From positions 24,552,001-24,616,000 of the forward strand of contig OZ281494.1 in assembly GCA_965637545.1 (NCBI GenBank): 64,000 nucleotides of DNA. Direction: 5' to 3'. Of this stretch, positions 1,201 to 60,900 are shown in pieces. The stretch comes from Phallusia mammillata. Its lineage: Eukaryota. The notes under the pieces were generated by a model. The model was not told the origin of the DNA. It did not search any database and saw only the letters and a list, made by a program, of their open reading frames with translations. Each line of letters begins with the position of its first letter. Positions within the stretch are counted from its first letter, which is position 1. A program made the position numbers and the translations under genes.

Positions 1201-4200
1201 CGCCTGGTGGGGATGGAATACCGTTGCTATTTAACAATGTTGTTCATCAATCTGTGCCCAACCATATGTCCACTGCAAATTCTACGCCAAAGCACAGGGT
1301 AGGTTTAAAAGCTCAACTAAGCTGGCTCCACAATAGTGTACAAAAAGCACCCTTATTTTAACTTTTCGGCAATATAAATTGATACAGTACAACTGTTTGT
1401 TCCCAAATAGATGTATAAATAACTTAAGCCATACAGTTGAAAATGTTAAAGGAAATTTGTGCATGTAATTGAAATTTAATCTTAGAATATTGAAAAGTCT
1501 TCAAAACGATTATCTCGTAAAAATGTTGCCACCCAAAATGAATCCATGACAGCGAATGAAAATAACTTCTCTGCTGATGTTCAAATGGTGGACAGCTGCC
1601 AACAAACTGGTAAGTTAAAATTTATATTCAAGTAAAATTGTAAAAGTGACCTTACTTGGTGGGAGATATTATTTTATTTTGTACTGTTATGTTCCTCAAA
1701 GGATTTTACTGTTTATTAGATTTTCCGGTAGCAATAGCTAGCAAATCGCTGACTGAACGTCCAAGCCCTCTAAAGAAAACTCGAAATCGACGTCATCGTT
1801 CGAGTATGCTCGTAAACAGCGATGATCGTGAATCATCAAGCGACCACGCTGATGCAGATATTGACAGTGATTCAGGATACTACAGGTTAGCAGCTTATAA
1901 AAAATTGCAAACAACTGTAGGAAAATTACTTACATTGTATTAAGCTGGTTTGTCAAGCCAAATATTTGTGCATGTACAGTTTTCTCTGCTTGGTTTGCAG
2001 ACATATTTAAGTGTGAATTAAAATGTTGTTGAATGTAATCAAGAACATTTGACTGCAATGTGTGAGAGTGTATGTGTCTGTTATGTAGCATTTTATCAAC
2101 GTAAAATTGTATTTGTCACTGTGCTTGCTTTTTCCTCATCAAGTGTTTTAAACAGTTTTTAGTGTTAATGTTTGTGTTTTATTTTTAGCCCTAAGCATCG
2201 AATGGTGCAAAAGCGCAGTGGAGGCACAAGTACATCAGAATTAACAAGTGGATTTCATCAAAACAGACTGGTATGTGAATGGTGCAGATGTTAATTAATG
2301 TCTCTATCTGGGTAATAAACATTAACAAAGAATTCATTTAGCACACAAGAGCTCGATTTAACTTAGTTAACCCACCGACATATGCGAGCTTTTTTGTGCA
2401 GGTTACCTGAAATTACATGTTTCACAAAATACACCTTGTAATCAAATTGTTAAAAAACTACTAGTACTGCTATGTAGCTTGTATGAGACAAATTCACTTT
2501 GCTCAGACTGGGGGTAACACAACTCCGGTATCTCGTGTGGTTTACCTCGCTCCATCACCTGCCCTCTACCAAGTACAAGCCCCACTATCTCAACAAGTGA
2601 TGTCAGGAATGTTGTCACCCCACCCAACCCCACCCCCGTCTTTATTGCTGACACCCCCTGGAACCCCACTTTTAAGTAAGTACAGCTTCTTTGTTTAAGT
2701 AAAATAGTATTTTTAGGTTGCCACTGATAAATGTGGATAATTAACAAATGAACATTTTTCTGAAGTCAAAACAGATGGCTATTTCTATACATTATTGTGA
2801 TATTTTATTTGAGGTAAAATGCTAAGCGGCATTTTCATTTTTTTTTAATAAATCAAAAGTGTAGCTTTTTTAAAATATAGTAATGCTGTCAAGTTTGTCA
2901 TGCAAACTCCAACTAATGCTGCACCTTAATAACTTCGAAGCTCTCAACAAACAAATTGTCTGTGTTTTTTCCACAGGTCAAAGTCCAGTGATAAGCCGAC
3001 CCCCACCAGGGTTTCCCCCTCCCCCCAACTACCTCAAACCCCAGGTGAGTCTCCTATAGTACCACAACCCCCTGACAGTATGAAAAAAATAGTTTAGACA
3101 TTTTTGTTTAGGGTAGCATTGCCTAACAAACAGCATATTTGACTTGAAATGGCATGTTTTTTTTGTTTTTTTTAATTTGCATTTTGGTGGTTACAAAACA
3201 TTCCCAATTCTAAAAGTTCTGCAAAAAATTGTGGTGCCAAAGAAACATTTTTCATGTTATTATTCTCATGCAAAAATATAGTGAAGCATTTTTTAGTGAT
3301 TATCAATATTATTAGCACAAATTTCCATTTGAACTAGTGTTTTAAAATTTTCTAGTGGTCTGGTCCCCTTTTTCTCAACAATCACCCCCAGTTTGCTGGT
3401 ACCAACTTAAACCCTCATATGGTTCCAACAAACCAGTTCTACCCTGGCAACAACCCTCAGTTTTCCCAGCGAGGACGAAATCGCCGTCCAAACTACAGCC
3501 CCAAACATCGATGGCAGGCACCACAACAATTTCCAACCAACTCAGTTCCCACCTCTCAGTTCTCTGGCTCAGATAATTCCTATGATAAGAGGAAACAGGA
3601 TAGGCGAAAAGTGACAATGCAAGAATTGTTTCATGACCACCGAGCATTTGCTAATGGAGTTTCAATTCCAACTCAAGACACCAATTCAGGAATTTTGTTG
3701 TCTGTAAGTTTGTTTTCCTTGGTCTATTTTTGTGTATTTTTTGTCACTTAAAAATGGATTAGGTATGGTGGTGTTTGACAAAAGTGTTTCTACCCACCTG
3801 GAAAAGTTCTAAACTTTATGGCACTTTAAGGATAACCCAATTGTTAACGTAATAGTTCTGTATTTTAATTTATTACTGTGACTTTAACTATTTATAGAAT
3901 GAGTGACATAGTAGAAAAATTCTTAATAGGAAATGTTAAAAAAGCAGGATTTTATCATTTCAACAAAAAAACTTATTTCACGAAATGCAATTATGAAAAC
4001 CCATGGTTGAATAATAACCTAAACATCTAAGACAACACCAAAAAGTTGTAAGGACCAACAAAAGCTGATTCATATAAAAAAATCCAATGCACTGTTTCAC
4101 ACTGTTGTGTGGTCTTATTACATGGATTCACTACATATTGACATTACCTGCATGCAAATTCAACCTTTTTACAGAAACATGCTATGCATAGGAACGCTAT

Positions 4201-7200
4201 ATTTAGATCTGTTCATACTTATATATCCCCTCTTCTAAAGGAAACACATACATAAACTTTATTTCCAAAATTTCCTAATTTGTTTTTTTGAAGTATTAAA
4301 TGTTTGGCCAATTTCAACATTATGTAGCCTGCAATCGTATTTTGAAATTGTGTTGCAGTTGACCTCCCAAAGTTTGGGTCAAGTCTTTAAATTTAATGTC
4401 ACTTCCAGGTTTTTTTAAGGTTTGGTTTGGGTGACCGCTAAGTAGTTTTAAGAGACCACAAGTGTTTCATTTAAATACCAAAAAATAGCCATATTTGCTT
4501 AAACGAATTATTTATTAGGCTACTGGCAAATTTTGGGAAACCGCTGGAGAAATTTGAAAAAACACCTTAAAAAAAACACTGGTCACTTCATGCAAAAGTT
4601 ATAGTTATTGTCAAAATAACCTTCTTAGACCACTGTTTTCCGACTGGTGGTCTATAAAAAGAAACAAAAACAACAACAAATGGGCCGCAGACAAATGAGG
4701 AAATGATAGACATGAACAATCAAGTCTGTCTTGCACGAAACAAAAGTTACAATTTTATTTCGCCAGCTTTATTTTTTCCGCACTGTTCAGGTTCTTTTTG
4801 TGTAACAATTCCCAATAATCCTTTTTGACTGGCCAAACAATTATTTCCTTGTTGTGAAAGCAGGTTTGGTGACGAAACACATTTGCACCTAACATTTTAA
4901 AGGTTTTTTTGTCTGATATTTGTACTTTTTGTGCACTTGTTAATAAACTAGCCTACTACGTTCAACAGCAAGTTTTGAACAAAACACAAAATCTTTTTTC
5001 ACTTTATGCCACAAAAGTAAAAAGGTTGACAAACAGGGTGTTAGACATAGTATGGTTAAGATTTAACCATTAGAAATACAAAATATGACATCACAATGTA
5101 CCAAACTGTTACAAATTTTTTGCATCCACCGCATAAACTTGGCACCCAATGAAAAAAGTCTGGGCACCCCTGCTCTTGGGCTATGCTTACTTCACAGTCT
5201 TTGAGGCATGACATAAAAGATACCAGTTCTTTTTTCACTGCGTCTTGCATGGTTAAACGCTTTCAGTTCCAATTTGCTGTGCTGCGTAACATTTGAGTTG
5301 CTGTTTTTAAATTTAGGTGAAATAATGTTAAAATTGGTCAATAATATTTTAGTAATATGAAACCTTAAAAAAGCAACAAAAACAATAAAAGTAGCCATTA
5401 AATGCATAGTGCAAACTGCAACTCTAACAAATAAATGTGTTTGCTACCTTTCCTATGTCAAATTTATGAACTGATGGGTGTAAGTTATAAACACTGGCTT
5501 ACTTTTCAAAAAATAATTAGTTTTTCAAAACAACTTGTATTTTTACTACAACAACTCACATATTTTACTACTTTTACTTAGGACACCCAGGAATTTCCAG
5601 GATTGGGGTCACCCTCTATGATCAACCAATCGATGTTGGTTGGCAGTCAGCTCTCCTACAGTGATGCTGTACTTGGAAAAACTATCATACACCAGTCTGT
5701 AAGTATTTGTCTAGTGCAGTGGTTCCCAACCTTTCTACACTGTGGGACCGGTAAAATTGTAAAAAAAATCCACGGACCGGCAACGAAAGATTGTAGTGAA
5801 TGCAACAGATATTTGTAAGCTTTTTGTTCACCAAAGTTGTCGCTGCGCAACATAATGCAAGATTTAGTCATAGCCTATGTATTTAGGGCGTAAAATTACA
5901 ACCAAACGGCAATCAAGTCAACTCAAACAACAAAACGTCAATCCATTTACATACAAAATCAATGCTATCTCAAAAGCGAAGAATAACTTCGTTTTACAAA
6001 AAAATGTTGAATGCTAGCCACAGTTTATGACAAAGCAATCATAAACGTCACAAAAGCTTTATTAAACAATTTGCGGGTATCAACGATGAAGAGCTACCCC
6101 AGTTTTACAGCCAGGCGTAAAATAAGTTTTGCAGGTACCAACAACTTTGCAATAGGCCTACTTATTATTCTATTTTAAAAAGTAGCTTGGCATAAAGTAA
6201 GATAATTTGCGGACCGGCAAAATATTTACGTGGACCGGCACCAGTCCGCGGATGGGCGGTTGGGAACCACTGGTCTAGTGTATTTGCTTTGTTATATGTC
6301 TTGCTGGTTGGCTGACTGGTTGTTTTGTGGTTTTTCAAAATGTTGCCGGTAATGGCTGTATGTGTAAACTGACTGAAGAGATGTTTTCAAGTCAACAATA
6401 TATTTCTATTTACTTAGTAAGTTGGGTCTATTATTAAGAGCTTGGAAGTAAAAATATGCTTAGACACAGGACTAGTGTGTTGCTGTCTCTCATGCATCTC
6501 TTAGGATTTAGAATATGTATATTGGCATTTTGAAAAGCTACCATTCTAGTTTATCATTTATGTTTAAGAATATCTTATTTACAATTTTATGTTTATATAG
6601 AAAGGCTTATTTTACTTCACGTTGTGGCACTTAACAAGCCAAAATTGAAATTTAAGCATTTTCAATCCTATTTGCTTTACTGCTATTTAAGGCACAATGT
6701 AGCAAAAGATAAATGCAGACATTGGTTGGTGTCATTGAACTTATAGCACACCGTGATTCATGTTTAGACTATGTGTCTGACACATGTTACCAATCTGGAG
6801 TATAAAAATATGCATTCCCACTCAAAGTTTAATTTGTAGTAGGAAGTTTATTATGTGCCTTATCTGCAGATTAAAAAATAACTTCCCAATATTATGGTAA
6901 ACTGAAGCTTTCGGTGCTGAGGTAGCCATTAAATAGCCGAAATCGATATTAATTACAATACATTGCAAAATGAAAAACACAGATTGATTCAAGTGCACTG
7001 AAAGCTTCAGTTTACTAAGTTATGATTATTCGTAACTTGAATCATCTGTATTGAGTGCACGTTGGTTCAGGACGATTTCTGTAAAAGCACAGTTTTATAT
7101 TCACAATATTATGTATTACTTAAACGGCATGGTACTATGTAATTGTGAATGATAGAAATCAGAGAAACATCTACTCCCAAAATGTTTTTGTTTCAGTGAT

Positions 7201-57652: not shown

Positions 57653-57994
57653 GAAAAAATGTTTAATTGTGTTTAGTTTGTGTCCCCCAAAAAATATTCT
57701 AGCAATTTACCACAATCACATTTGTTTCGCATCAGCAGTACAAACGAAAGTGTACGTTTACTACGCAACATGTACTCAAATGCAATTCATGCTGCCAGTG
57801 GCAAGGCACCACCATGGCGCGTTTTATTTAGTAATATTGACATGGTTTTACTAATTTTAGTTTAGATGAGAGAAACTGCAGCCGTGTCGAGTTTTATATA
57901 ATCTGGGTAAATAGTCAACTTTTTGAATTTAACGAAATGCAATTGCTTTTCAGCAAAATTCAGTTTCATTTTTAGAAAGAACAATTGTGGCAAC
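57653..57994. promoter_or_regulatory. Probable bidirectional promoter shared by CEP95 (-) and RPTOR (+)
   Basis: Only about 340 bp separate the divergent start codons. The call depends on the tentative CEP95 first exon; even from the confident second exon (about 56920) the gap is about 1.1 kb. Confidence 0.6.
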
Positions 57995-60900
57995 ATGGAA
58001 AAGCCTAAGGTTAAAATCACTGAAGACACAAATCCTGATGATGAAAGTGAGATAAGTATTCCAAATGATACTCCAACACCCATTGCATTTCAGGAAAAAC
58101 AGCATTATGAAAAAATTGTTGGAAGAAGCGAAATGACACAAACTTGGAGAATGAAAGAAAGGGTTGGTCTAAATTTTCACACACAAATTTACCTTATTTA
58201 TTTAATTTAAGCAAATGTGCATTTTTTAGTTGTTAAAACTATGGTCAAGATCCAAATGTTTAATCTTCGTCAGTGATATCTAATCTGCAAGTAAAGTACA
58301 TAACAAATGCGTAAAAAATAAGATAAATACTTTTTAATACAAATAAATATTTTTTTAATAGAATTTGTTGTTTAGTTTAAATTTTTTTAAACAAAATTAC
58401 CTTGATAAAACATTTTTAATCTTTGCACTCTAACTTTTTATTATGTACTGATTATTTACAGCAAACAGAAAATTTTATTGTAAAGGTTAATTGGTGTAAC
58501 TTACATACAGATGAAAACAGTGAGTGTTGCTCTCGTTCTTTGTTTAAATGTTGGTGTCGACCCTCCAGATGTGGTTAAAACTTCTCCTTGTGCAAGAAAA
58601 GAATGCTGGATAGGTCGGTTAAGTTGCTATTGCTCCATTGTTTTCTCAACTAAACATGACACTAAAACCATTTTAAACATTTGTCACAAACAAAATTTTG
58701 CAAGAAAAATCTCTGTGTACATGTATGAATAAATGACAATTTTGTTGATATAACTATTTTTAGATCCATTGAGCCACAGCCCACAAAAATAAAGTAATTT
58801 TGTTGATATAACTATTTTTAGATCCATTGAGCCACAGCCCACAAAAGGCATTGGATTCAATTGGGAACAGTTTGCAAAAGCAATATGAACGCTGGCAGCC
58901 AAGGGTTAGTAAGATGTTTTTAATAGATTTTTCATGAAAAATTTCCAAATTCATACAATCAATTTTTATTTTCTGCTTTGCTTCTGTAAGCTAACACGAA
59001 AAAAAGTAAACAGGTTGACAGTAGCTTTGAATAATTGCACAGGTCAAGACACTGAGAATGTCATTTTTCTTTGGATATGTCTTTATAGCTAATGGTGTTT
59101 TAAATTAAGTTATGCCACCGTGGAGGCTTCAAATTTTAATTGAAGTGTGGTCAGTAAATACAGAGCAAACAAGTCTAATTATTTATTTTTTCTGAGCAGA
59201 TTGACATATCTGTTTCTGTAACCTAACAGTATGGATAGAATCTCTTGCAAACATTTTTTCGATGGCAACTTATTCAAAACTAAAAACTTCTGTAAAGATT
59301 CCACACCCCTGTTCTGAAGAATAGTCTTAGAAAAGCAGTTCTAATGTTAAAACTATTGTTATTCTCATTGATTTGCTAACATATGTTTTGTTTTTAGGCA
59401 AGATACAAGCAGAGTCTTGATCCAACAGTAGAAGACATAAAGCGACTTTGCACATCCCTTAGGCGTAATGCTAAAGAGGAAAGAGTTTTGTGTCACTATA
59501 ATGGACATGGAGTTCCAAGACCTACTACGAATGGAGAAATTTGGGTGTTTAACAAGGTAACTAAAATTTAAAAGTATTTATAAAAAAATTTTTGTTTATT
59601 TGAACAAATTTTAAAGCAGCAATTTTTTTTACTATTATTCAGTGTTTAATATACATAACAATATGAGATGTTAGTAACAGGAGTAATTAGGCAAAAATGT
59701 GTTTTCCTAGAAAACAAACATTATAAATTTCTGAAATTTTCTCGGTGCAACCCTGATAACAGCACTTAGTTAACCATTGCCTACTGCTACAATGTATTTT
59801 ATGACTTGTTGTTGCAGTTATATAGTGACCTAGATTGCATTTAAACAATTCTACCGTTTTTTTAAACACTCTCTATTGTGTGTTTGATGTTTGTATTAGT
59901 ATGTTTATGAAAACATTGCAAAAAAATGCCTAAAGTGTGTCAAGTAACTTTATGTTAAAAGCTAAGAATTTTTTTTGTGTACTTTAGGAGGGGATCTGGT
60001 AACACTGGACCACACAAAATCATTGATTATTAAGTGTTTTGTAATAATGAGTTTAAGTTTACTAATGTAACAATTAAATTGAAACATGTCACTTTCATTT
60101 TTATGAACAATTGGCTTGTGATCTACATGCAAATTTAATACAATAAGTTTGTGCATGCAGTTAGAAATGGAGGAAGTGCTAAAACGACTGTAGGCATTAA
60201 GTCATCAGACATTCCATGAACAATCCCAAAATGCCTGCTCTGATTCACCATTGTTTATCTTTTGGCTAAAGTTCAGCCAAAAATGTACACTAACGTACAA
60301 ACCACTGTTAACAATATTTATTTTGTTACAGACCTACACACAGTACATTCCTTTGTCAATATATGACCTGCAATCTTGGATGGGCAGCCCTTCAATCTTT
60401 GTGTATGATTGTTCATGTGCAGGTCTCATAGTTAGTTCGTTCAAATCGTTTGCTGATCAACGACAACAAGACATGAAGGTAGAAGTGTTGCTCAAAATAA
60501 CTGCCATTCAACATAATATACTTGTCAAGTAGTTAAATGTATGTTTATTTTGCAATCCAGGTCAACTTTTAGTATTTTTCAACACCGAAATAAAAAACTT
60601 TTTGAAATAATACTGAAAAAAGCTTGATTTTGCTTCAAAGTTATACATATAGATTTTGTCACCCACTTTAAGGGTAAAACTTGCATTTATAACCTGCAGA
60701 TGAATGGAGGGCGCTTATCACCGGGGGCAACAATGTGTGATGTTCGGAACTGCATACAATTGGCTGCCTGTTCAGCAACTCAGCTTCTTCCAATGAACCC
60801 AGAACTTCCAGCTGATCTTTTCACAGCTTGTCTCACCACACCAATAAAGATCGCCCTCCAGTGGTTCTGTCACCAGCGGCAAGATTCTCTTTCTCCTGGC

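What the first reader, a model, noticed from the sequence alone, without database searches (positions are those of the whole stretch)
58739..58850. Duplicated RPTOR 3' splice site creates an identical decoy acceptor that leads straight to a stop codon
Seen: about 50 bp covering the polypyrimidine tract, the AG and the first 25 nt of RPTOR coding exon 3 are present twice, 58 bp apart. The upstream AG (58762-58763) has the same context as the functional AG (58820-58821). Using it gives D-P-L-S-H-S-P-Q-K then TAA (58790-58792), truncating Raptor after about 100 aa. A GT follows at 58794, but the 28-nt gap to the next AG is probably too short to splice. Known: 3' splice-site selection tends to favour the first suitable AG after the branch point, premature stops trigger NMD, and Raptor is the essential TORC1 scaffold. 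Inference: this is either a built-in unproductive-splicing dial on TORC1 dosage, a recent hypomorphic allele, or an assembly artefact.
Basis: partly seen in the sequence, partly recalled or inferred. Interest (0 to 1): 0.7.

Follow-up and report, generated by a model that had tools for sequence, protein, structure and literature searches.

The report
Duplicated splice acceptor in sea-squirt Raptor
A 58-base tandem duplication has copied the end of an intron and the start of an exon in the sea squirt Phallusia mammillata's essential Raptor gene; it is real and present in every sample examined, but the assembled messenger RNA uses the downstream copy, so the extra copy is removed with the intron and the protein is normal.

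Summary
A perfect 51-nt direct repeat (58738-58788 and 58796-58846), with a 7-nt spacer ATAAAGT, duplicates the polypyrimidine tract, the AG and the first 25 nt of Raptor coding exon 3. Using the upstream AG would read DPLSHSPQK and then stop.

It is not an assembly artefact. Contigs from three DNA runs of three studies, with different flanking SNPs, each hold a piece that bridges the spacer. That piece has the same depth as the flanks, and the repeat contig has about twice that depth, so the duplication looks homozygous in all three.

A spliced 4.1-kb RNA contig and the public P. mammillata Raptor protein both use the downstream, productive acceptor (58613 to 58822). No transcript using the decoy was seen.

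Clavelina and Ciona have a single acceptor at the orthologous intron, so the duplication arose in the Phallusia lineage. The copies are identical, so it is young.

Best reading: a near-neutral boundary duplication absorbed into the intron, a natural version of the classic duplicated-3'-splice-site constructs. Low-level decoy use cleared by NMD was not measurable here, because only contigs were available. A regulated TORC1 dial is unsupported.

The scan's first readers noted other duplicated acceptors elsewhere in this genome; I did not check those.

The parts
57995..58162 (+). Raptor coding exon 1 (ATG at 57995). An upstream 5'UTR exon is spliced onto 57976.
   Evidence: Read from the sequence. 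56 of 56 residues match P0154. RNA contig joint 58162 to 58511, and a loose end before 57975 that matches 57877-57906.
58511..58613 (+). Raptor coding exon 2. It ends with 1 nt of a split codon; the donor is GTCGGT.
   Evidence: Translation. 34 of 34 residues match P0154. RNA contig.
58614..58821 (+). Intron 2 as actually spliced: 208 nt, of which 58 nt are the duplication. It would be 150 nt without the duplication.
   Evidence: X6 joint 58610 to 58819, 'skips 208, GT..AG (cut +3)', which equals 58613 to 58822.
58738..58788 (+). Repeat copy 1, the decoy: 26 nt of intron end (including TTGAT and ATAAC branch-like motifs, the pyrimidine tract and AG1 at 58762-58763) plus the first 25 nt of exon 3.
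   Evidence: 100% identity. The 51-nt contig has about twice the flank depth in X1, X3 and X4.
58789..58795 (+). 7-nt spacer ATAAAGT (filler at the duplication joint). It supplies the TAA stop (58790-58792) and a GT (58794-58795). Together with the start of copy 2 it forms a GTAAT branch-like motif 25 nt before AG2.
   Evidence: No template for it was found within about 1 kb on either side. It is bridged by a 67-nt contig, 58759-58825, in X1, X3 and X4.
58796..58846 (+). Repeat copy 2, the functional one: intron end with AG2 at 58820-58821 plus the first 25 nt of exon 3.
   Evidence: The acceptor is used in RNA contig X6 and in the public protein P0154.
58822..58904 (+). Raptor coding exon 3 (83 nt). 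The donor is GTTAGT at 58905.
   Evidence: 27 of 27 residues match P0154. X6 joint 58904 to 59398.
59398..59556 (+). Raptor coding exon 4 (Raptor_N domain).
   Evidence: Pfam PF14538 at E = 3e-24..

Best explanation
This is a young tandem duplication in the Phallusia lineage: 51 nt copied, plus 7 nt of filler. It spans the intron 2 / exon 3 boundary of the Phallusia mammillata Raptor gene. It is at very high frequency or fixed. It is tolerated because the spliceosome pairs the exon 2 donor (58613|58614) with the downstream acceptor (AG2, 58820-58821). The upstream copy and the spacer are therefore removed as part of a 208-nt intron, and the normal protein is made.

Shown: the duplication exists in reads of three independent samples at full dosage. 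The assembled mRNA and the public protein carry the productive junction. Two other ascidian genera have one acceptor.

Inferred: both copies are identical from -26 to +25, so the choice must come from what lies beyond that. AG2 is followed by the rest of the exon and by the real donor 83 nt away. AG1 is followed after 25 nt by U-rich intron-like sequence. Exon-bound factors and U1 at the downstream donor would therefore stabilise U2AF/U2 on copy 2, and a branch point downstream of AG1 would be used (candidates: GTAAT at the spacer joint, TTGAT and ATAAC in copy 2). Any transcript that does use AG1 has a stop 30 nt into the exon, with many junctions downstream, and would be an NMD substrate. 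The filler at the joint points to an end-joining type repair event as the origin.
For: The repeat is perfect: 2 x 51 nt with spacing 58.

DNA runs X1, X3 and X4 (three studies). Each has a contig that ends 30 nt into copy 1, a 51-nt repeat contig, a 67-nt contig (58759-58825) bridging the spacer, and a contig starting 30 nt before the end of copy 2. This is exactly the k=31 graph expected if the duplication is present.
- Depths for spacer / flanks / repeat: X1 110 / 97-104 / 220; X3 9.7 / 6.5-11.3 / 21.8; X4 9.4 / 8.1-8.2 / 17.9.
- X1 gives an internal dosage control. A heterozygous indel in intron 1 splits into contigs of depth 59 and 50.
- X3 and X4 differ from the reference at 16 and 20 SNP positions in 1651 nt, and differ from each other, so these are separate haplotypes.

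X6: one 4146-nt contig spliced at three GT..AG introns, joining 58613 to 58822 with no extra letters. No X6 contig lies on the spacer.

the public P. mammillata Raptor protein (CAB3265778.1) reads [17 protein letters not shown] across the junction and matches the window exons at 612 of 613 residues.

Searches (Clavelina lepadiformis; Ciona intestinalis): the exon structure is the same and there is one acceptor.

Literature: in beta-globin constructs with a duplicated 3' splice site, whose upstream copy keeps 14, 55 or 205 nt of exon, splicing went exclusively to the distal site (PMC5389562).
Against: All runs were available only as contigs. Contigs drop rare variants and cannot quantify isoforms, so decoy use of up to roughly a tenth of transcripts, or more before NMD, would be invisible.

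The genotype of the RNA sample is not known directly.

Human transcriptome data say that in short introns the upstream of two equally strong 3' splice sites is usually preferred (PMC9225289). This argues that AG1 should compete.

The TGAC motif 28 nt before AG1 lies outside the repeat. If it is the ancestral branch point, AG1 is the more complete site.

The inference of homozygosity in X3 and X4 rests on contig depths of only about 6-11.

Only three samples were looked at.
Confidence: 0.72

Rival explanations
1. Leaky decoy, a constitutive hypomorph. AG1 captures an appreciable fraction of pre-mRNAs, or double occupancy of the two acceptors slows removal of intron 2. The products are destroyed by NMD, so the duplication lowers Raptor output without being a regulated device.
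For: The two acceptors are identical from -26 to +25, and each has branch-like motifs of its own. Short-intron architecture favours the upstream 3' splice site in human data. Concurrent occupancy of duplicated 3' splice sites inhibits splicing in vitro. The stop lies 30 nt into the exon with many junctions downstream, which fits the NMD rule (sequence).
Against: No decoy-junction or spacer-containing contig appears in RNA run X6, where the mRNA contig has depth 24. The truncated 99-aa product is not in the protein collection. Apparent fixation in an essential gene argues that any cost is small.
Confidence: 0.2
2. Regulated unproductive splicing. The decoy acceptor is a selected switch that tunes Raptor/TORC1 dosage through AS-NMD.
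For: Only the anatomy supports this: a poison acceptor in an essential dosage-sensitive scaffold gene, apparently at high frequency.
Against: It is not shared with Clavelina or Ciona. The copies are still 100% identical, so it is young, and nothing indicates conservation. No alternative isoform has been observed. No regulatory element distinguishes the copies, and the fold of the region is unremarkable (z = -1.5).
Confidence: 0.05
3. An assembly or polishing artefact, or a private variant of the sequenced animal.
For: Before the read check: a perfect short tandem duplication in an essential gene is the sort of thing assemblers can create.
Against: The spacer-bridging 67-nt contigs are assembled independently from the reads of X1, X3 and X4 (three studies, different SNP backgrounds), at full depth.
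Confidence: 0.01

Closest known systems
Artificial pre-mRNAs with a duplicated 3' splice site (Reed & Maniatis 1986 beta-globin constructs, re-examined in PMC5389562)
   Same: There are two identical branch/pyrimidine/AG units in tandem, and the upstream one keeps only a short piece of the exon (here 25 nt; 14, 55 or 205 nt in the constructs). The distal, exon-adjacent site is the one used in the product.
   Different: This is a natural germline allele in an essential gene of a wild animal, apparently fixed, in a 150/208-nt intron. Use of the upstream site has not been quantified here, and the splicing machinery is ascidian, not human.
Intron creation or extension by tandem duplication (Rogers model; Hellsten et al. 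2011, PMC3265369)
   Same: A short intragenic tandem duplication copies splice signals, and the redundant copy is removed by splicing, which leaves the protein unchanged. Such an allele can spread nearly neutrally.
   Different: No new intron is born. An existing intron is lengthened by 58 nt because the duplication spans its 3' boundary, and only the acceptor, not an AGGT pair, is duplicated.
Alternative 3' splice sites coupled to NMD (regulated unproductive splicing; poison acceptors or exons)
   Same: Using the upstream AG adds 58 nt, shifts the frame and gives a stop after 9 codons, far upstream of the last junction.
   Different: Known regulated cases are conserved and their alternative isoform is detectable. 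Here the feature is lineage-specific and young, and the alternative junction has not been seen.
Tandem acceptors of the NAGNAG / wobble type
   Same: There are two AGs that compete for one donor.
   Different: Those lie 3-9 nt apart and are chosen at the second catalytic step from one branch point. These lie 58 nt apart, each has its own pyrimidine tract, and the choice is made at initial recognition (PMC9225289 draws this distinction).

Membership tests
Raptor / RPTOR orthologue | Raptor N-terminal caspase-like domain, and collinear match to known Raptor proteins | tested here: met
   PF14538 at E = 3e-24 on exon 4. The 13 exons match P. mammillata Raptor at 612 of 613 residues and are collinear with the Clavelina, Ciona and Styela Raptor proteins. 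The HEAT and WD40 parts lie beyond the window.
Tandem duplication of a 3' splice site, absorbed into the intron | Two copies of pyrimidine tract + AG + exon start in direct tandem | tested here: met
   51 nt at 100% identity, spacing 58.
Tandem duplication of a 3' splice site, absorbed into the intron | The duplication is present in the organism's DNA, not only in the assembly | tested here: met
   Spacer-bridging contigs at flank depth in X1, X3 and X4.
Tandem duplication of a 3' splice site, absorbed into the intron | The mature mRNA uses the exon-adjacent (downstream) acceptor, so the coding sequence is unchanged | tested here: met
   X6 contig joint 58613 to 58822. Public protein P0154 reads through the productive junction.
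Tandem duplication of a 3' splice site, absorbed into the intron | The ancestral state has a single acceptor | tested here: met
   Clavelina L001 4047-4213 and Ciona L002 have one acceptor and no repeat there. No closer relative was available.
Regulated unproductive splicing (AS-NMD) | The alternative, PTC-containing junction is detectable in RNA | tested here: inconclusive
   It was not seen in the X6 contigs or in the protein collection. However, contigs drop rare forms and NMD would deplete it. Raw reads were not available.
Regulated unproductive splicing (AS-NMD) | The PTC is placed so as to trigger NMD | tested here: met
   TAA at 58790-58792 lies 30 nt into the extended exon, with at least 10 junctions downstream inside the window alone. 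That NMD follows is inferred from the general rule and was not tested in ascidians.
Regulated unproductive splicing (AS-NMD) | Evolutionary conservation of the poison site | tested here: not met
   It is absent in Clavelina and Ciona. The identical copies imply a recent origin.
Regulated unproductive splicing (AS-NMD) | Use of the site changes with condition or feeds back on the pathway | not testable with these tools
   This needs RNA-seq or RT-PCR under changed nutrient or TOR conditions.

The most novel reading that the evidence does not exclude
The duplicated acceptor is a newly fixed, functioning poison splice site. A condition-dependent share of Raptor pre-mRNA is routed to AG1 and destroyed by NMD, which would give Phallusia a lineage-specific post-transcriptional brake on TORC1 that arose in a single mutational step.
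Probability: 0.05. Interest if true: 0.7.

Novelty: new member of a known kind. Interest (0 to 1): 0.27.

Why it matters
This is a clean natural counterpart of the textbook duplicated-3'-splice-site experiment. Two acceptors are identical over 51 nt in a short intron of an essential gene, and the distal one wins in the assembled mRNA. It shows how a duplication that looks like a loss-of-function lesion in annotation can be harmless, because splicing removes it, and how introns can grow by boundary duplication. For variant interpretation and gene prediction it is a caution against calling such alleles null. For splicing mechanics it offers a ready test of how exon context competes with proximity in an intron-definition-sized intron. 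It says nothing new about TORC1 biology unless decoy use turns out to be substantial.

Tried and rejected
- RNA structure that might hide AG1: the fold of 58690-58950 has z = -1.5, with 20 of 200 shuffles as good. The 20-nt inverted repeat that brackets the region is AT-rich and not convincing.
- Templated origin of the 7-nt spacer: no junction-spanning 8-mer or longer recurs between 57700 and 59900 on either strand.
- Missing branch point as the reason AG1 is skipped: rejected. AG1 has ATGAC (-28), TTGAT (-16) and ATAAC (-11). AG2 has GTAAT (-25), TTGAT and ATAAC. The other Raptor introns place such motifs at -19 to -28.
- Micro-exon reading (AG1 ...
- Exact look-up of the predicted 99-aa truncated product (P0154:1-99): not in the collection. 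Its absence means little.
- Aligning the intron ends across the three genera: there is no usable conservation.
- TRF did not report the 1.9-copy repeat.
- Literature phrase searches for natural duplicated acceptors gave almost nothing. One search on the Phallusia genome was uninformative.
- No closer relative than Clavelina or Ciona could be fetched, so the date of the duplication rests on copy identity alone.

Full report
**Observation.** The window holds the 5' part of a Raptor gene on the + strand.
- Coding exon 1 is 57995-58162, exon 2 is 58511-58613, exon 3 is 58822-58904 and exon 4 is 59398-59556. Nine further exons run to 63920.
- Exon 4 hits Pfam Raptor_N at E = 3e-24.
- The repeat finder reports two copies of a 51-nt stretch at 100% identity, 58738-58788 and 58796-58846, 58 nt apart. 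They are separated by ATAAAGT (58789-58795).
- Each copy holds 26 nt of intron end (AATTTTGTTGATATAACTATTTTTAG) and the first 25 nt of exon 3.
- Exon 2 ends with one base of a split codon. Splicing to the upstream AG (58762-58763) therefore reads D-P-L-S-H-S-P-Q-K and then TAA at 58790-58792. The insertion is 58 nt, so it would also shift the frame.
- In the whole 64-kb window this is the only perfect local duplication of 30 nt or more that is not part of a satellite.

**Organism.** Earlier notes of the scan called this a sea squirt, and one named Phallusia mammillata. I tested this. A profile-free search with one exon found a Clavelina lepadiformis Raptor. A word search with that protein then found the public P. 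mammillata Raptor, CAB3265778.1. The 13 window exons, translated one by one, match it at 612 of 613 residues and in order. The genome is P. mammillata.

**Is the duplication real?** All public runs were available as Logan contigs only. I laid X1 (0.99 of the words, probably the assembly's own animal), X3 and X4 (DNA, two other studies) and X6 (RNA-like) on 57950-59600.
- A perfect repeat longer than k = 31 must break a de Bruijn assembly in a predictable way. All three DNA runs show exactly that pattern: a contig ending at 58767, a 51-nt contig for the repeat, a 67-nt contig 58759-58825 that bridges the spacer, and a contig starting at 58817.
- The bridging contig can exist only if reads contain the duplication joint.
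- Its depth equals that of the flanks, and the repeat contig has about twice that depth:

| Run | Spacer contig | Flanks | Repeat contig |
|---|---|---|---|
| X1 | 110 | 97-104 | 220 |
| X3 | 9.7 | 6.5 and 11.3 | 21.8 |
| X4 | 9.4 | 8.1-8.2 | 17.9 |

- X1 supplies its own dosage control. A heterozygous indel of about 296 bp in intron 1 splits into contigs of depth 59 and 50.
- A heterozygous duplication would give a spacer at half the flank depth and a repeat at 1.5 times the flank depth. That is not what is seen.
- X3 and X4 differ from the reference at 16 and 20 SNP positions in 1651 nt (about 1.0% and 1.2%), and they differ from each other. The duplication therefore sits on several haplotypes.
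- The tool warns that contig depth is not a copy number. These short, specific unitigs are the most favourable case for reading depth, but for X3 and X4 the depths are low.
- Conclusion: this is not an artefact and not a private allele. It is at high frequency and possibly fixed. If these are six independent chromosomes, the allele frequency is above about 0.6 at 95% confidence.

**Which acceptor is used?**
- X6 gives one 4146-nt contig spliced at three GT..AG introns. It joins 58162 to 58511, 58613 to 58822 and 58904 to 59398, with contiguous record coordinates and no extra 58 nt.
- No X6 contig lies on the spacer or on copy 1.
- The public protein reads ...[17 protein letters not shown]... 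across the junction.
- The predicted truncated product, which equals residues 1-99 of that protein, is not in the protein collection.
- So the steady-state mRNA uses the downstream, productive AG. Because contigs drop rare variants and NMD would deplete decoy-spliced RNA, minor use of AG1 is not excluded.

**Age and origin.**
- The orthologous intron was fetched from Clavelina lepadiformis (L001, intron 4047-4213) and from Ciona intestinalis (L002).
- Both keep the same exon 2 / exon 3 structure, and both have a single acceptor with no local repeat there.
- The duplication therefore arose on the Phallusia side. No closer relative could be fetched.
- There are zero differences in 51 nt. Copy 1 is presumably unconstrained, and about 20 sites of copy 2 are free. 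This bounds the age at about 4% neutral divergence per lineage (95%). The within-species pairwise difference measured here is about 1%.
- The 7-nt filler has no template within about 1 kb on either side. It does not fit a simple slippage duplication. This points to an end-joining type repair of staggered breaks. That is an inference.

**Mechanism.**
- The two acceptors are identical from -26 to +25, so any splice-site score is the same for both.
- Both have branch-like motifs. AG1 has ATGAC (-28), TTGAT (-16) and ATAAC (-11). AG2 has GTAAT (-25, created by the spacer joint), TTGAT and ATAAC. Other Raptor introns place CTAAC, TTAAC or GTAAC at -19 to -28.
- Local RNA folding is unremarkable (z = -1.5).
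- The copies differ in what follows +25. AG2 has the rest of the exon and its donor 83 nt away. AG1 has U-rich intron-like sequence.
- The first AG after the branch point is normally taken. Use of AG2 therefore implies a branch point downstream of AG1, that is, U2AF/U2 assembling on copy 2.
- The most economical cause is exon context: factors bound to the exon and U1 at the downstream donor.
- This matches the classic duplicated beta-globin 3'-splice-site constructs, in which the upstream copy keeps 14, 55 or 205 nt of exon. There, exon length beside the proximal site was reported to matter, and a later study found splicing exclusively to the distal site, with double occupancy inhibiting splicing (PMC5389562).
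- It runs against the statistical rule from human transcriptomes that, in short introns, the upstream of two equally strong 3' splice sites is preferred (PMC9225289). That is why leaky decoy use remains a live rival.

**Comparison and novelty.**
- The phenomenon is known in principle: a tandem duplication copies splice signals and is then removed by splicing (Rogers model; Hellsten et al. 2011, PMC3265369).
- Here it lengthens an existing intron instead of creating one.
- As AS-NMD it fails the conservation test, and its isoform has not been seen.
- I file it as a new natural member of a known kind.

The vertebrate and primate Raptor proteins listed were not fetched or used.

Noticed in passing
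L002:1563-1712 (Ciona intestinalis Raptor, the same intron as window 58614-58821): In Ciona the orthologous intron begins with 7.5 perfect tandem copies of a 20-nt unit, GTGGGTGTTGTGATGTCATA. Its first copy starts exactly at the donor site, so the 5' splice-site hexamer GTGGGT is reiterated seven times inside the intron (99% matches). This is a donor-side counterpart of the Phallusia acceptor duplication, in the very same intron. The annotated protein uses the first, exon-adjacent donor.
   Followed up: partly
window 58171-58466 (Raptor intron 1): Run X1, probably the sequenced animal, is heterozygous for an indel of about 296 bp. A 74-nt contig (depth 50) joins 58170 to 58467 with 14 other letters between, beside the reference form (depth 59).
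   Followed up: partly
window 58281: X3 and X4 each carry an 11-nt insertion behind 58281 (AATCTGCATGA and AATCTGCGTGA) that the reference lacks. This is an indel polymorphism in intron 1, and the reference is the odd one out.
   Followed up: no
window 58693-58712 and 58925-58944: A 20-nt inverted repeat (90% complementary) lies in intron 2 and intron 3 and brackets both acceptor copies and exon 3. It is AT-rich, and the fold of the region is not significant.
   Followed up: partly
window 57877-57975: The RNA contig shows a 5'UTR exon ending near 57906 that is spliced to 57976, 19 nt before the ATG. 'Coding exon 3' is therefore the fourth exon of the transcript.
   Followed up: no
   Followed up: no
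other pieces of this genome (earlier notes s1-361554, s1-353711, s1-408654): First readers flagged further duplicated or decoy splice acceptors in this genome (Beclin-1 exon 8, a MITE target-site duplication, a hammerhead retro-insertion). If these are real, acceptor duplication absorbed by splicing may be recurrent in Phallusia.
   Followed up: no
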